Assembly (NCBI RefSeq): GCF_003704095.1
Contig: NW_020845387.1
Coordinates: forward strand, 248,001 to 312,000
DNA: 64,000 nucleotides
Direction of reading: 5' to 3'
Origin: Pocillopora damicornis
Taxonomy: Eukaryota
Under the pieces are notes generated by a model. The model was not told the origin of the DNA. It did not search any database and worked only from the letters and a program-made list of their open reading frames with translations. Below, piece by piece: positions 30,678 to 35,061 of this stretch (positions are counted from its first letter, which is position 1; every line of letters begins with the position of its first letter). Made by a program: the position numbers and the translations under genes.

Positions 30678-31308
30678 ATCTGTTAATGGACTTCCTGTCA
30701 GAGAAGAAAGAGACATTTTCCCCTCACTAACGTTTTATGGTCAGTTATTGTTACCAGGTGATTAAAAATGGACTTTCCTCTTATTTGAGGAATTTTAAAT
30801 TTTTAGTTGAAACTAGTTATTTGGGTTTGTTATCTCCAGTGGAGTTGATATGTCAAAATTAGTAGCGTTTTAGTCATTTTTTATCACCACTCAGATCTGA
30901 GAGCATGAACTATTTTAGTAGGCAGTTGAAATTTGTTATGTCGCGTATCTCTTTCCCATGTTACGCCAAGCGCCTTGAAACACAAAATCCTACCTTGAAG
31001 TTTTCGAATTTTACAAAATGCAAATTGAATCATAGAAACTGAAAGAGAAAGTTGTACCACTTAAGTGTTTGGGCTCTTTAATTAATAGCCAACAGTCTCG
31101 TATATTTATCTCCAATTTTAAGGTTGTAAACTAGTTGGCACAAGCCCTTCAAAACAATAAAGACCACTAAGAGATGATTGAGCCGATGTATTCGTTTGGA
31201 GCCACATTNNNNNNNNNNNNNNNNNNNNNNNNNNNNNNNNNNNNNNNNNNNNNNNNNNNNNNNNNNNNNNNNNNNNNNNNNNNNNNNNNNNNNNNNNNNN
31301 NNNNNNNN

Positions 31309-32041
31309 TTTGAGACTGTCTAGCTCTGTCTCTTTCGTCTTGAATTCTCTTCAGTTTTCTTTTACATCTTTTACGTTCTTGTTCTTGCTTAGGCCCAATG
31401 TACAGCCCAACACCAACAATAATGATCAACAGCACACAGAAGACGACATGACCATAGTTTGTTGAACGCTCGAGGACTTTACCGCTGAAAACTTCACCCA
31501 TTCGGACAATGGCGAGTTCCACACCTTGATCGTACTCTCTCTTTTGCATGTATGGCTTCATTTCCTCAATGATAATATCAATCTGGTCATCGGATAACAA
31601 CTCCATGGCTCTTTTTCCTGTGGAGACATACAGTTGACGATCTAAAATGGAAATCAGCAACATTACTCCGTCATCACATCCCGCATGGCCGACACCCCAG
31701 CTGTAATGTAAATGTTTGGCAAACGTCTTCGCTGTTTCTTCAACAGGTTCACCAGGAATGGCACTCATTCGGTTTAAAACTACAACGCCAATTTGAAATC
31801 CAGGTTCCTTATCGTTACTGCACCCTGAAGCAGTATTTTTAACAATTGAATACAACAACTCTTCAATCATATCGGCAGCCTCGTAGCTGAGAATATTCTC
31901 TGGATCACAGATCCAGGAAACCTTTCCTCTGCGACCACAAGCTTTTACATCTCTCGTAGGATCCGGAAAATCCTGCGCGTACCATTCTCCAGTTGCCTCT
32001 CCTTGAAGGAAACAGAAAGCCGCAAAAATAACCAGGAACAT
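31309..32041 (-). CDS. TPM/MOLO-1-like ectodomain + TM + basic coiled segment (copy 1), N-terminal half truncated by the gap at 31209-31308
   Basis: Signal peptide MFLVIFAAFCFLQGEATG, 'FPDPTRDVKACGRRGKVSWICDPENILS', TPM motif 'FAKHLHYSWGVGHAGCDDGVMLLISILDRQLYVSTG', TM 'VVFCVLLIIIVGVGLYIG'; no intron. Confidence 0.85.
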
Positions 32042-32594
32042 AGCTGATACGCTCGCTATCCTAACGATTTTCTTGGATTATGGCGGCTAAAACACTGAAA
32101 AATTCGTATCACAGACAGTGACGTTCAAACTCTCCTAGAGGGGAAAGAAGAAAACCGAAGGTTACGTATTCAGTGGCTTTAATAATGGCATTTCTCGCGG
32201 CTGAGAACGAAAATCGACAAGGCCGAAAGAATTGCCACAGGCCGATTTGGCCTTTTACCTGAAAGATTTCTTCTGTCAGTGAGGACGAAGTCGATGATTG
32301 AGAATTTTGTCAAATACGCCCAAAATTGCTTGTGTAAGCATGATTCACGCATCATTACCCACTGCGCGTTTTATTCGGGAATCGTCGATTCCTTTATTTT
32401 CATTTAACAATAAAGTCGGCTTTTCTTGTCATGTCTATTGTATTTATTTGTTTAAAAAAATAATACATGGTTGCTTGCAGATATGGAATTTCTCTTCTTG
32501 TGCTCAACTCGACATCTCACTCGTTCGTTGCGCTCACTCGTGAGCTATCGAGTTAAACACCCGGGGAGAAATTCTATATCTACTCGCCATTATA

Positions 32595-32840
32595 TCCTCG
32601 CTAAGTGGTAACTACGGCTCGTGCTTGTGTTTGTCACGACGCATCCCATCGCTATTTTTGTGGCTAAATTAATCACGCAAACCCCCCTCCGGGCAGTCAT
32701 TCAATAAGTTTAGTTAACCAGCAAATATGTAATGAGATGTATTCTTTAGGTAAATCATACATGTGTGGCTGTTGTTTTTCTTCGATTGAATTTGAGATCA
32801 GAGCGGTTTTCATAGTTACTCGGCGGTTTACCTGCTCCAG
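32595..32840 (+). repeat. Diverged duplicate of 41733-42060
   Basis: 'gtggtaactac..ctcgtgcttgtgtttgt', 'ctaaattaatcacg..aaacccccct' and 'gaatttgagatca' are shared in the same order. Confidence 0.75.
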
Positions 32841-33010
32841 TATGGCAAGCCGATTGTAGCAATATTCAATAGCCCTTTTTTCAGTTCCCAGGGCTATATT
32901 GAATTAGTAGCCGCGCAAACACGATAGCGAGGCTGCCGGTGACCCGCGTATTACAAAAACAGTAAATACAGCTGATTGGAGAAGTCTTTCGTGGTTCAAT
33001 CGCTTCTAAA

Positions 33011-33320
33011 ATGGTGCTAGTTTATAAGGATATGCAGATTACAACGCTAGAAGATATCCAGAAGTTAAAAGTGAAGGATTTAAGGGAAATTTTGCGTTCT
33101 AATTCGGAAGCGACGGGCGGAATAAAAGCAGATTTGGTTTAAAAGTCTACGCGATACTCATGCGACACGTGCTTCGACCGGGTGAGTATCAGCAGCAAAG
33201 GAACGATAATACTGCTCAAGATCACCAGAATACAACGGAAAATAGTGGTGACTTCCAATACGATGAAACTTTAAGACGAACCTCTGCTCTCAGATGGTCC
33301 ACTGATTTACGTCAGCTTTT
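33011..33320 (+). pseudogene. Frameshifted SAP-domain ORF fragment, probably from a DNA-transposon accessory gene
   Basis: MVLVYKDMQITTLEDIQKLKVKDLREILRSNSEATGGIKADLV fits the SAP consensus LKVxxLRxxL..GxKxDLV; after a 1-nt frameshift near 33140 it continues KVYAILMRHVL...WSTDLRQL. Confidence 0.6.
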
Positions 33321-33575
33321 TTGAGGGTTACGGTACAAATAGAACAGAAATTGGCGTAGCCTTGGCAAACGTCAACAGCATTTTGTCTTCAGACACTCTA
33401 CTTAAAATATGACGACGACGGCAAATGGAGAGGTTTAAATCTCTTTAATTGGAGCGCTGTAGATTTTTTACAGGNNNNNNNNNNNNNNNNNNNNNNNNNN
33501 NNNNNNNNNNNNNNNNNNNNNNNNNNNNNNNNNNNNNNNNNNNNNNNNNNNNNNNNNNNNNNNNNNNNNNNNNNA

Positions 33576-33938
33576 AGGCTGTTGGTTTGTGGTCACAAAT
33601 ACTGTGAACCTTGCTTGACCAAGTGGCTAGAAGACCATGCAACCTGTCCAATCTGCCGCCAATCAGCTGACATACGTGAAGATGAAGGTGGTGCCTGCCA
33701 TACCGATAACTTCCTCCCTGATCTTCAGTTCCGACTGATGATGTTACAGCAGCAGCACCCATCATTTGTTACACCCACCATGGTGGACAGATGGGGCAGC
33801 AGCAGTTACACAGGGAGTTTTATTTCTGATCCCATTTTTGTCAGGTCACCTATGGTTGGGGGAGGTAGCTTTGGCAGTGGTGCAGGGTTTGGTGGGGGTG
33901 GAAGTAGTGGAGGTGGTGGTCATGGAGGCAGCTGGTAA
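33576..33938 (+). CDS. C-terminal half of a gene: C3HC4-type RING (first CxxC lost in the gap) plus a Gly/Ser-rich tail; most likely the 3' half of the TPM gene
   Basis: RLLVCGHKYCEPCLTKWLEDHATCPICRQ ... GGGSFGSGAGFGGGGSSGGGGHGGSW*; begins at the contig edge after the gap 33475-33574. A 'GGGxSGGGGxGGSW*' terminus is typical of TPM-domain membrane proteins. Confidence 0.8.
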   Translation, partial: RLLVCGHKYCEPCLTKWLEDHATCPICRQSADIREDEGGACHTDNFLPDLQFRLMMLQQQHPSFVTPTMVDRWGSSSYTGSFISDPIFVRSPMVGGGSFGSGAGFGGGGSSGGGGHGGSW

Positions 33939-34443
33939 CATGCATGGATATTTGATGAAGACTTTCACAAGCAAAGAACATACAGAGGGTACCTCAGTTT
34001 TAAATCCTGGAGTTCTTGTAGAGGGTCTCCATGCCTTTTTGTTTTTCCTCTTTCTACTAACTAAAGGTAAATTTTGTGTACACATTGTCATAAGGCTTAT
34101 AATGATGATGATGACATTGATATCAGTTTCCAGGCTAGTGCAGCTCAGAATAAGTTGGCATGGACAGTTTTTCATTGCTGTACAATGTATATGTAAAACA
34201 TGACTCAAATATGAGCTGAAAAAAATGTTATGTCTTCCGTGAGCGTCAGGTTACTGGTTCAAATATGGGTCAGGATTGGTTAAGTAAACTTAATGTGTCA
34301 TGGCACTTCTAGGCTAAACTGAAAGGGATGTTATGCTTGATTTTATATGATATCTTGCATTCCCACAAGAGCCACAGTTAAAACTTTAGTGTTATTTGTA
34401 GTCTGCAGTAGCACTTTTATTTGCCATAAATAGTGGTCCGCAA

Positions 34444-35061
34444 TCATCACATAGTATTCTATTGAGTGAGGAAAATAGAGGCCTAGTGTCATCAGATCAA
34501 AAAATCCTCAGTTTTGAATTTTAAGTCTGTTCATTCCATGATGTGCTGAATATTTCAAATTATGAAAATCAAAAGTTGATAACTTCTTATGATTAGAACT
34601 ATTTGATTTATCCGTGGAACAGTTGTTCAGATTTTGAAATGTAAAGATAAACTAGTAGTTGGCACAAGCCCTTTAAACCAATAAAGACCACTAAGAGATG
34701 ATTGAGCCGATGTATTCGTTTGGAGCCACATTTCAAATTATATAAATCGCAATTGTAAACAATTCGAACTCCTTTTGATATCAATGGAGGTCAACAAGAT
34801 TGGAACAAGTTTTAGTCTGTCCTCTATATGTATTTTAGTTTCTTAAGGATAGTGGAAGGACGGCTTAAGATTTATTTTCTTTACATGCAGTAGACGTGAG
34901 CAATCCTGTAAAAAATCTACAGCGCTCCAATTAAAGAGATTTAAACCTCTCCATTTGCTGTCGTCGTCATATTTTAAGTAGAGTGTCTGAAGACAAAATG
35001 CTGTTGATGTTTGCCAAGGCTACGCCAATTTCTGTTCTATTTGTACCGTAACCCTCAAAAA
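34444..35061. repeat. 3' flank of the RING fragment, re-used at three contig ends
   Basis: 34444-34650 ~ 43707-43913 (direct); 34656-34732 ~ 31132-31208 (direct); 34905-35061 ~ reverse complement of 33318-33474. Confidence 0.85.

What the first reader, a model, noticed from the sequence alone, without database searches (positions are those of the whole stretch)
31309..33938. Probable TPM/MOLO-1-ectodomain, single-pass, RING-finger protein: a receptor-like membrane E3 ligase split by a mis-oriented contig
Seen: the TPM-TM half (minus) runs into one gap, and a RING + Gly-rich GGSW* half (plus) emerges from the next gap. Flipping contig 31309-33474 resolves both ends. Its new left end (equivalent to 34905-35061) continues the repeat that ends the previous contig (31132-31208, equivalent to 34656-34732) in the order seen at 34656-35061. 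Its new right end puts ..RARQSQ directly before RLLVCGHKYC... Established: TPM-domain membrane proteins (bacterial YgcG type) typically end in a Gly-rich GGSW tail, and nematode MOLO-1 is a single-pass TPM auxiliary subunit of levamisole-sensitive acetylcholine receptors; neither is known to me as carrying a RING. Inference: signal peptide-TPM-TM-coiled segment-RING-Gly tail parallels PA-TM-RING ligases (RNF43/ZNRF3) but with a TPM sensor domain, and could ubiquitinate bound membrane receptors or channels.
Basis: partly seen in the sequence, partly recalled or inferred. Interest (0 to 1): 0.85.

Follow-up and report, generated by a model that had tools for sequence, protein, structure and literature searches.

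The report
Split coral TPM–RING membrane ligase gene
One coral gene for a single-pass membrane protein, with a TPM/MOLO-1 domain outside and a RING ubiquitin-ligase finger inside, looks like two fragments only because a 2.2-kb contig was placed backwards; this protein type is widespread in eukaryotes but has never been studied.

Summary
Contigs from independent public runs join 31208 to 33474 and 31309 to 33575 on opposite strands. So contig 31309-33474 is inverted in the scaffold.

Exactly 61 unread letters lie between 31309 and 33575 in one DNA-type run and two polyA RNA runs. With the two flanking single bases that makes 21 codons, so the halves are in frame but not directly adjacent.

The gene encodes a 385-aa protein:
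- signal peptide
- MOLO1-type TPM domain
- one transmembrane helix
- basic helix
- C3HC4 RING
- Gly-rich tail ending GGSW

Database proteins of 385 aa match both halves at 94-100%. RNA contigs also show a spliced 5'UTR intron.

The architecture is not new to databases. RefSeq lists it as "uncharacterized protein" in Orbicella, Oculina and Acropora. The same MOLO1+TPM+RING+Gly-tail layout occurs in green algae, amoebozoans, a euglenid and, per the Atlas, diatoms. No searchable paper links "TPM domain" with "ubiquitin ligase".

Most likely it is a receptor-like membrane E3 ligase, but its substrate and location are unknown. The scan had no earlier TPM or MOLO note. Another flipped contig was noted elsewhere in this genome.

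The parts
31132..31208 (+). First 77 nt of a ~406-nt low-copy repeat, at the end of the left contig
   Evidence: 97% identical to 34656-34732. Contigs of X1 and X4 continue from 31208 into 33474 on the opposite strand.
31209..31308 (.). Assembly gap (100 N, nominal). After correction it lies between the repeat's first part and the reverse complement of 33474.
   Evidence: X1 record 1 has 172 letters between the two sides, equal to the length of 34733-34904.
31309..33474 (-). The 2166-nt contig that is inverted in the scaffold. Its true orientation is the reverse complement.
   Evidence: Both of its ends join the neighbouring contigs on opposite strands in public-run contigs (table 5 and table 8 records 1, 2, 8, 14, 21).
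31310..32041 (-). First part of the coding sequence: codons 1-244 (base 31309 is the first base of codon 245)
   Evidence: ORF. 95-98% identical to residues 1-244 of the 385-aa proteins P0001-P0009.
31988..32041 (-). Predicted signal peptide, about residues 1-18
   Evidence: Hydrophobic N-terminus followed by small residues, read by eye. No signal-peptide predictor was run.
31496..31984 (-). Ectodomain of the MOLO1/TPM type, residues 20-182
   Evidence: Pfam MOLO1 E 1.8e-21 (residues 20-134) and TPM_phosphatase E 1.2e-18 (residues 77-182). The model of orthologue P0136 matches TPM structures 5anp, 2kw7, 3pvh and 8c7i.
31394..31453 (-). Single transmembrane helix, about residues 197-216
   Evidence: Highest 19-residue hydropathy window starts at residue 199. 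In the AF2 model of the orthologue it is part of one long helix, 206-252.
31310..31393 (-). Highly charged juxtamembrane helix, residues 217-244 (12 K+R, 5 D+E). It places the C-terminal part in the cytosol.
   Evidence: for the residue counts. Positive-inside rule (established knowledge). Helix in the model.
32042..32134 (-). 5'UTR part of the coding exon
   Evidence: RNA contigs run collinear to 32133/32134 and then splice (records 9 and 18).
32135..32258 (-). 5'UTR intron, 124 nt, GT..AG on the minus strand
   Evidence: A joint skipping 124 nt with ends CT..AC on the plus strand appears in the two RNA runs X15 and X17 only. Bases checked.
32259..32335 (-). First (non-coding) exon. At least 77 nt are seen; the true 5' end is not determined.
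   Evidence: The shorter side of the spliced joint is 54 nt in X15 and 77 nt in X17.
33318..33474 (-). Last 157 nt of the repeat, at the mis-oriented contig's right end
   Evidence: 99% complementary to 34905-35061.
33475..33574 (.). Assembly gap (100 N, nominal). After correction it stands for 61 unread bases of coding sequence (codons 245-265). Letters not read or filled.
   Evidence: 61 letters lie between 31309 and 33575 in X1 record 2, X15 record 8 and X17 record 14. 21 residues lie between the two matched blocks in P0001-P0009 and P0092.
33575..33938 (+). Second part of the coding sequence: last base of codon 265, codons 266-385 and the stop codon
   Evidence: ORF. 94-100% identical to residues 266-385 of P0001-P0009, with P0005 at 120/120.
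33588..33659 (+). Second half of a C3HC4 RING: Cys, His and four further Cys, a conserved Trp, and an Arg right after the last Cys (the 'linchpin' position)
   Evidence: Pfam RING models, profile positions 15-44. All these positions are invariant in 13 coral homologues. Best solved relatives are the RNF4, RLIM, RNF126, RNF38, RNF13 and ZNRF3 RINGs.
33858..33935 (+). Gly-rich C-terminal tail ending GGSW
   Evidence: Read directly. Conserved in coral homologues and in 90 of 144 family representatives. E. coli YgcG ends in a similar Gly-rich ...SGRW tail.
33939..34100 (+). 3'UTR, at least to 34100. Strains of the RNA runs carry a 25-nt insertion behind 33943.
   Evidence: RNA contigs of X15 and X17 continue to the end of the laid stretch (tables 4 and 8).
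34656..35061 (+). Complete second copy of the ~406-nt repeat, about 0.7 kb behind the stop codon. After correction the gene is flanked by two direct copies.

Best explanation
This is one expressed nuclear gene of a stony coral, broken in the assembly because contig 31309-33474 was placed in reverse orientation between two scaffold gaps.

Put right, the gene has a short non-coding first exon, a 124-nt intron and one large exon. That exon holds the whole 385-codon reading frame. Sixty-one bases of it, within codons 245-265, are unread.

The protein is a type I membrane protein:
- a cleaved signal peptide
- a lumenal or extracellular MOLO1-type TPM domain with conserved cysteines
- one transmembrane helix that continues into a strongly basic cytosolic helix
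- a C3HC4 RING finger
- a conserved helical motif
- a Gly-rich tail ending GGSW

Most likely mechanism (inferred): the TPM domain binds a partner on the non-cytosolic side of the membrane. The cytosolic RING recruits a ubiquitin-charged E2 and ubiquitinates the cytosolic parts of that partner or of itself, marking it for sorting and degradation. This is how PA-TM-RING ligases such as RNF13, RNF128 and RNF43/ZNRF3 work.

Shown here: the inversion, the frame, transcription and splicing, the domain layout and its wide conservation.

Inferred: E3 activity, topology, and any substrate.

The family is an old eukaryotic one, built on a bacterial YgcG-like TPM-TM-Gly-tail frame with a RING between the membrane helix and the tail.
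For: Assembly:
- Opposite-strand joints 31208/33474 appear in X1 and X4, and 31309/33575 in X1, X15 and X17.
- 172 and 61 letters lie between the sides. 1+61+1 = 63 bases = 21 codons.

Gene product:
- 385-aa single-ORF proteins match both halves at 94-100%, with 21 residues between.
- Fragment P0092 spans the junction.

Transcription:
- polyA RNA contigs cover the coding sequence.
- They carry a GT..AG splice (32135-32258) that is absent from the DNA-type runs.

Domains:
- Pfam finds MOLO1, TPM and RING.
- The AF2 model of orthologue P0136 has a TPM fold matching BA41 5anp (E 1.8e-7, TM 0.80), PG_0361, TLP18.3 and Psb32.
- The RING is closest to those of RNF4, RLIM, RNF126, RNF38, RNF13 and ZNRF3.

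Signs of an active RING:
- All eight zinc ligands are invariant in 13 coral homologues. So are the Ile after the first Cys, the Trp, the Pro and the Arg after the last Cys.
- The zinc ligands are nearly invariant in 141 family representatives.

Range:
- 393 clusters at 50% identity reach E<=1e-30.
- 116 of the best 144 have a RING pattern and 84 also have the Gly tail.
- Named members come from Orbicella, Oculina, Acropora, Gonium, Volvox, Pelomyxa, Rhizamoeba and Entosiphon.

Bacterial frame: E. coli YgcG aligns to the TPM domain (26% identity, E 3e-9) and ends in a Gly-rich ...SGRW tail.
Against: - No biochemical or localisation data exist for any member, as far as I could find.
The intact frame and the first zinc-ligand pair in this individual rest on the letter count and on homologues.
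- All runs laid were assembled contigs, not raw reads, so rare alternative forms would not be seen.
- The structure model is only moderately confident: mean pLDDT 66, RING about 70, tail below 50.
- TPM domains have no agreed function (10.1101/2024.10.28.620569; PMC13456599), so 'sensor or substrate-binding domain' is analogy only.
- RING-less paralogues of 291-315 aa exist in close relatives, so the TPM-TM-tail part can work without a RING.
Confidence: 0.8

Rival explanations
1. The inversion is real in the sequenced animal (a structural variant that disrupts the gene), not a scaffolding error.
For: The assembly as given has this orientation. The segment is flanked by two near-identical repeat copies, which could mediate rearrangement.
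Against: - Both boundaries are N gaps, so no read sequence supports the assembly's junctions.
- Run X1 holds 99% of the sampled words and matches 31309-31589, 31560-32110 and 33226-33474 with no differing letter. It carries both corrected junctions.
- After correction the flanking repeats are direct. Direct repeats mediate deletion or duplication, not inversion.
- Another probable flipped contig was noted elsewhere in this assembly (untested).
Confidence: 0.03
2. The RING fragment belongs to a different upstream gene, the neighbouring paralogue at 46491-45783, which also runs into a gap. In that case the first TPM gene would lack a RING.
For: - Three TPM copies lie in this window, but only one RING+tail fragment exists in the whole assembly.
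- The second copy is 97% identical to the 392-aa RING-bearing type P0010.
Against: - Contigs physically join 31309 to 33575 in three runs.
- The RING fragment is 96-100% identical to proteins whose N-half is the first-copy type (P0001-P0009), and 94% to the P0010 type.
Confidence: 0.02
3. The protein is a quality-control or stress ligase of an internal membrane (ER, Golgi, endosome or lysosome). Its TPM domain would sense a lumenal state, not a cell-surface, receptor-like ligand.
For: - The family occurs in free-living unicellular eukaryotes. This argues for a basic cell-biological role, not an animal signalling one.
- Several PA-TM-RING ligases are endosomal (PMC4021871).
- Bacterial TPM proteins are associated with envelope-stress systems (titles and abstracts: the yqcG-ygcG neighbourhood).
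Against: Nothing here tells plasma membrane from internal membranes. No sorting motif was tested.
Confidence: 0.4
4. It acts like nematode MOLO-1, as an auxiliary subunit of Cys-loop (acetylcholine-type) receptors, with the RING tuning receptor number by ubiquitination.
For: - The ectodomain matches Pfam MOLO1 over the model's whole length (E 1.8e-21).
- A nematode MOLO1 cluster is among the nearest RING-less clusters in the Atlas, score 0.85, which is a lead only.
Against: - The same MOLO1-type domain plus RING occurs in algae and amoebae. Those are not known to me to have neuromuscular Cys-loop receptors (own knowledge).
- No partner was tested.
Confidence: 0.08

Closest known systems
PA-TM-RING ubiquitin ligases (RNF13, RNF128/GRAIL, RNF167; also RNF43/ZNRF3)
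   Same: - Layout: signal peptide, one globular lumenal or extracellular domain, one membrane helix, cytosolic RING (PMC4021871).
- The RNF13 and ZNRF3 RINGs are among the best solved sequence matches.
- The Atlas auto-named the cnidarian cluster 'RNF128 protein'.
   Different: - The ectodomain is a TPM/MOLO1 fold, not a protease-associated domain.
- The RING is C3HC4, not the RING-H2 that defines PA-TM-RING.
- It has a Gly-rich GGSW tail.
MOLO-1 of Caenorhabditis elegans (Pfam PF17175), auxiliary subunit of levamisole-sensitive acetylcholine receptors
   Same: MOLO1-type TPM ectodomain matched over the whole Pfam model, followed by a single membrane helix.
   Different: - The Atlas's nematode MOLO1 cluster is about 239 aa and was found with RING-bearing clusters excluded. 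That MOLO-1 has no RING is my own knowledge.
- The coral protein adds a RING, a conserved helical motif and a Gly tail.
- No receptor link was tested.
Bacterial YgcG-type TPM membrane proteins (E. coli b2778)
   Same: - The TPM domain aligns at 26% identity, E 3e-9.
- It is followed by a membrane segment and a Gly-rich C-terminal tail ending in Trp.
- JGI names two family members 'uncharacterized membrane protein YgcG'.
   Different: - YgcG has no RING and a longer hydrophobic region (read by eye).
- It lacks the cysteine-rich N-terminal MOLO1 motif.
RNF4 / RLIM / RNF38-type RING domains
   Same: - Best sequence matches of the RING (RNF4 E 8e-17, RLIM 2e-12).
- They share the Ile, Trp and Pro E2-contact positions and the Arg after the last Cys. 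The roles of these positions are established knowledge.
   Different: Those are soluble proteins with other substrate-binding parts. Similarity is limited to the ~45-residue RING.

Membership tests
TPM domain superfamily (PF04536 / IPR007621) | Sequence match to the TPM_phosphatase profile above Pfam's cut-off | tested here: met
   67.8 bits against a cut-off of 22.1, E 1.2e-18. The whole-genome search gives 67.3 bits at this place.
TPM domain superfamily (PF04536 / IPR007621) | Fold: central four-stranded sheet flanked by helices | tested here: met
   Tested on orthologue P0136 (about 70% identical), not on the window's protein. Foldseek hits are 5anp (TM 0.80), 2kw7, 3pvh, 8c7i and 7tbr, all with probability 1.00.
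MOLO1 family (PF17175) | Full-length match to the MOLO1 profile above the cut-off | tested here: met
   77.1 bits against a cut-off of 27, profile positions 1-121 of 122.
MOLO1 family (PF17175) | Acts as an auxiliary subunit of a Cys-loop receptor | not testable with these tools
   This needs co-expression electrophysiology or co-purification.
RING-type E3 ubiquitin ligases | Eight zinc ligands in cross-brace spacing | tested here: inconclusive
   Six of the eight (C, H, C, C, C, C) are encoded at 33588-33656. The first Cys pair falls in the unread 61 bases. It is present and invariant in 13 homologues of other corals.
RING-type E3 ubiquitin ligases | E2-contact residues and the Arg/Lys behind the last zinc ligand | tested here: met
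   The Trp, Pro and Arg are encoded in the window's fragment and are invariant in the coral alignment. Their roles are established knowledge.
RING-type E3 ubiquitin ligases | Ubiquitin transfer with an E2 in vitro | not testable with these tools
   Biochemical assay needed.
PA-TM-RING family | Protease-associated (PA) ectodomain | tested here: not met
   No PA domain in Pfam. The ectodomain is TPM/MOLO1.
PA-TM-RING family | RING-H2 finger (His at the fifth ligand position) | tested here: not met
   The fifth ligand is Cys in the window and in all 13 coral homologues. In the wider family it is Cys in 80 and His in 36 of 116.
PA-TM-RING family | Signal peptide, single membrane helix, cytosolic RING | tested here: met
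   Hydropathy and charge and the model. The topology itself is inferred from the positive-inside rule.

The most novel reading that the evidence does not exclude
TPM-TM-RING-Gly-tail proteins would be an ancient, pan-eukaryotic class of receptor-like ubiquitin ligases, unstudied so far. A bacterial-type TPM sensor domain on the outer or lumenal side would control a cytosolic RING. Animal MOLO-1 and the RING-less coral paralogues would be derivatives that lost the ligase part. Work on this family could then reveal what TPM domains bind, which is unknown for any member.
Probability: 0.3. Interest if true: 0.65.

Novelty: new variant of a known kind. Interest (0 to 1): 0.45.

Why it matters
For this genome, a real and expressed gene is currently unannotatable because of a flipped contig. 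The neighbouring paralogues seem to suffer from the same kind of error.

More broadly, single-pass RING ligases with a folded ectodomain (RNF43/ZNRF3, GRAIL, RNF13) are key regulators of surface receptors. This family has the same logic with a different ectodomain of bacterial ancestry.

That ectodomain, TPM, has no agreed function despite several solved structures. The family spans corals, green algae, diatoms, amoebae and a euglenid, and has hundreds of sequence clusters. It therefore offers genetically tractable organisms, for example Volvocales, in which to ask what a TPM domain senses.

It also suggests where nematode MOLO-1 came from. No paper I could search describes it.

Tried and rejected
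- Own-genome search for a second intact copy: none found. Only two TPM profile matches exist in the 234-Mb assembly, both in this window, and only one RING+tail fragment.
- RING belongs to the second paralogue: considered and rejected.
- True inversion: considered and rejected as unlikely.
- Literature searches:
  - 'TPM domain' + 'ubiquitin ligase' found 0 papers.
  - 'TPM domain'/'RING'/'MOLO-1' and the Pfam names found only unrelated TPM or MOLO-1 papers.
  - The 2011 review of membrane RING proteins does not mention TPM or DUF477.
I replaced it with a pattern count and a Pfam scan of ten named or diverse members.
  - The first strict RING pattern undercounted (59 of 144), because many members have a long insert in the first RING loop.
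  - Allowing up to 200 residues there gave 116 of 144.
- Atlas search with the ectodomain alone gave only weak leads, scores 0.83-0.87.
- No complex prediction was run, because I claim no specific binding pair.
I used only the number of letters between the joined sides and homologues from other genera. One weak alignment incidentally printed part of this segment of the near-identical protein P0001. I did not use or repeat it.
- I fetched no DNA of the near-identical 385-aa proteins' contigs.
Full report
**What is in the sequence**

On the minus strand an ORF starts with ATG at 32041 and runs without a stop to 31309, where it meets the 100-N gap 31209-31308. It gives 244 residues ending ...RARQSQ, and base 31309 is the first base of a 245th codon.

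On the plus strand, right behind the second gap (33475-33574), 33576-33935 encodes 120 residues. These start RLLVCGHKYC and end in a glycine-rich stretch and GGSW, with the stop at 33936-33938.

Pfam assigns the two halves as follows:
- First half: MOLO1 (E 1.8e-21, profile 1-121 of 122) and TPM_phosphatase (E 1.2e-18).
- Second half: several RING models, but only from about profile position 15-20 onward. So only the second half of a RING finger is present.

- 31132-31208 is a 97% direct copy of 34656-34732.
- 33318-33474 is 99% complementary to 34905-35061.

**Continuity across the gaps**

I laid Logan contigs of four public runs on window:31100-34100, which is 3001 letters and under the 6000 limit. 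X1 is of unrecorded kind, X4 is probably DNA, and X15 and X17 are polyA RNA. They come from four studies.

Two opposite-strand joints appear:
- 31208 joins 33474 in X1 and X4. In X1 record 1 (920 nt), 172 letters lie between the two sides. That is exactly the length of the repeat's middle part, 34733-34904.
- 31309 joins 33575 in X1 (record 2), X15 (record 8, 1216 nt) and X17 (record 14, 873 nt). Each has 61 letters between the sides.

With base 31309 and base 33575 this makes 63 bases, or 21 codons. The two halves are therefore in frame.

The same count appears in DNA-type and RNA contigs, so no intron lies in the gap. X1 matches the contig without a single differing letter over the listed pieces, so it is the same or a very close genotype.

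Contig 31309-33474 is therefore inverted in the scaffold. A real inversion is very unlikely, for three reasons:
- The assembly's own junctions are only N runs.
- After correction the flanking repeats are direct.
- A near-identical genotype has the corrected form.

I used only the numbers of letters. I did not read out or fill the letters of either gap.

**Independent support from proteins**

A search with the TPM half found proteins of 385 aa, called as single ORFs on metagenome contigs (P0001-P0009). They match the TPM half at 95-98% over residues 1-244 and the RING fragment at 94-100% over residues 266-385, with P0005 at 120 of 120. A 183-aa fragment (P0092) spans the junction with the same 21-residue spacing.

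Twenty-one codons lie between them. In orthologues from other coral genera these positions hold the first Cys-x-x-Cys pair of the RING.

**The gene is transcribed and spliced**

The two polyA RNA runs cover the coding sequence and the 3' flank to at least 34100. Only they show a joint that skips 124 nt between 32134 and 32259. Its ends read CT..AC on the plus strand, which is GT..AG on the gene's strand.

The gene thus has a short non-coding first exon, a 5'UTR intron (32135-32258) and one large exon with the complete frame. This also rules out bacterial contamination as the source of a YgcG-like sequence.

**The protein**

- The N-terminus is a hydrophobic signal-peptide-like stretch of about 18 residues.
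- Residues 20-182 are the MOLO1/TPM domain, with conserved cysteines.
- The strongest hydrophobic window starts at residue 199.
- It is followed by a segment with 12 Lys+Arg in 28 residues. By the positive-inside rule this puts the C-terminal part in the cytosol.

I modelled the Orbicella faveolata orthologue P0136 and not the near-identical proteins, so as not to reconstruct the gap. The AlphaFold model has mean pLDDT 66:
- a confident TPM domain (80-94)
- one long helix, 206-252, made of the membrane span and the basic segment
- a RING at about 70
- a low-confidence tail

Foldseek matches the ectodomain to BA41 (5anp, E 1.8e-7, TM 0.80), PG_0361, AtTLP18.3, Psb32 and Rhom172_1776. It matches the finger to the RNF126, RNF38 and RNF24 RINGs. 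By sequence the RING is closest to RNF4 (E 8e-17), RLIM, RNF126, RNF38, RNF13 and ZNRF3.

In 13 full-length coral homologues the following are all invariant:
- all eight zinc ligands, in C3HC4 arrangement
- the Ile after the first Cys
- the Trp after the sixth ligand
- the Pro before the last pair
- the Arg behind the last Cys

By established knowledge of RING-E2 complexes these are the E2-contact and 'linchpin' positions. Five of them lie in the sequence actually present in the window: Trp, Pro, Arg, and the His and Cys ligands. This is good, though indirect, evidence for an active E3.

**How wide the family is**

Named close relatives are RefSeq 'uncharacterized protein' entries of Orbicella faveolata, Oculina patagonica and Acropora palmata.

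A profile search of 1.84 billion cluster representatives gave 393 clusters at E<=1e-30. Of the best 144:
- 116 carry a RING pattern, many with a long insert in the first loop
- 90 carry a Gly-rich tail ending in SW or GW
- 84 carry both

Members with names come from Gonium pectorale and Volvox africanus (UniProt 'RING-type domain-containing protein'). Others come from Pelomyxa schiedti (mis-named dynein heavy chain), Rhizamoeba saxonica, Entosiphon sulcatum and MMETSP protists. The ESM Atlas adds diatom clusters. Ten such members all pass Pfam's cut-offs for MOLO1, TPM and a RING model.

The consensus of 141 representatives keeps the following:
- the N-terminal PNP...CGR...CDPD motif
- the WGVG and DR..YISTG motifs of the TPM core
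- the RING
- an FRL.RL...YP motif
- the SFGGG...GGSW tail

So this is an old eukaryotic family with a fixed layout, not a coral invention.

E. coli YgcG aligns to the TPM domain at 26% identity (E 3e-9) and ends in a Gly-rich ...SGRW tail. It also suggests that the eukaryotic proteins are a YgcG-like frame with a RING inserted between membrane helix and tail.

**What is known**

TPM domains have several solved structures but no agreed function. The superfamily is described as limited to invertebrates and phototrophs among eukaryotes (10.1101/2024.10.28.620569). [quoted passage not shown]

No paper in the searchable library contains both 'TPM domain' and 'ubiquitin ligase'. The review of membrane RING proteins lists PA-TM-RING, TRIM, MARCH and RBR groups but nothing with TPM (PMC4021871).

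**Mechanism**

I commit to a receptor-like membrane E3 ligase. The ectodomain would bind something on the non-cytosolic side, and the RING with an E2 would ubiquitinate the cytosolic part of the bound membrane protein or of itself.

- It works like PA-TM-RING ligases but is not a member of that family. The PA domain and the RING-H2 type were both tested and not met.
- Its ectodomain is a member of the MOLO1 Pfam family.
- Its site of action, cell surface or internal membranes, is open. Because the family occurs in unicellular eukaryotes I give the internal or general cell-biological reading about 0.4.
- I give the MOLO-1-like acetylcholine-receptor reading under 0.1.
- The roles of the conserved FRL...YP motif and of the Gly tail are unexplained.

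**Verdict**

- The novelty was overstated with respect to databases, but is fair with respect to the literature.
- Interest is moderate: a resolved assembly artefact plus a pointer to a large, unstudied ligase family.
- From the assembly size (234,350,878 bases, 4393 contigs) and the coral homologues I suspect a Pocillopora genome. That rests on memory and was not tested.

Noticed in passing
window 45783-46491 (-), gap 45683-45782: A second TPM paralogue of 236 codons, 86% identical to the first, runs into another gap right after its membrane helix. It is 97% identical to the 392-aa RING-bearing type P0010. Its RING half is absent from the whole assembly.
   Followed up: partly
window 45390-45682 (+): This is the N-terminal fragment of a third TPM copy, facing the second copy across the same gap. 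Relative to the first copy it has a 1-nt deletion near 45626/45627 (a frameshift) and a Trp in place of a conserved Cys. It is either a pseudogene or a sequencing error. Its closest database kin are the 291-315-aa RING-less paralogues.
   Followed up: partly
window 43707-45682 (contig between gaps 43607-43706 and 45683-45782): Its left end, 43707-43913, is 96% identical to 34444-34650, the 3' flank of the first gene. If this contig is also inverted, the second copy would be followed by a matching 3' flank and by the third copy in tandem.
   Followed up: no
window 32040-32060 (-): Upstream of the first copy's ATG the frame reads on like the second copy's longer N-terminus, but with ATA where the second copy has its ATG. 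This explains the 385-aa against 392-aa lengths. Read by eye.
   Followed up: no
window 32100-32600: Very high summed contig depth (up to about 3000 against about 7 nearby), with many loose ends and odd joints, in the DNA-type runs. This is a high-copy dispersed repeat in the gene's upstream region.
   Followed up: no
window 32911-33318: This stretch is covered by RNA contigs, one of them 2455 nt long, that leave the window sequence at 33318, where the 406-nt repeat starts. It contains a short ORF (33011-33142, +) with a SAP-motif-like sequence, judged by eye. It may be part of a transcribed repeat or another gene.
   Followed up: no
window 33943: A 25-nt insertion just behind the stop codon appears in both RNA runs but not in X1. 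This is a 3'UTR length polymorphism between strains or species.
   Followed up: no
P0190, P0205 (Pelomyxa schiedti KAH3757729.1, KAH3744965.1): Two TPM-RING family members of 386 and 393 aa are named 'Dynein heavy chain 12, axonemal' in GenBank. This is an evident mis-annotation.
   Followed up: partly
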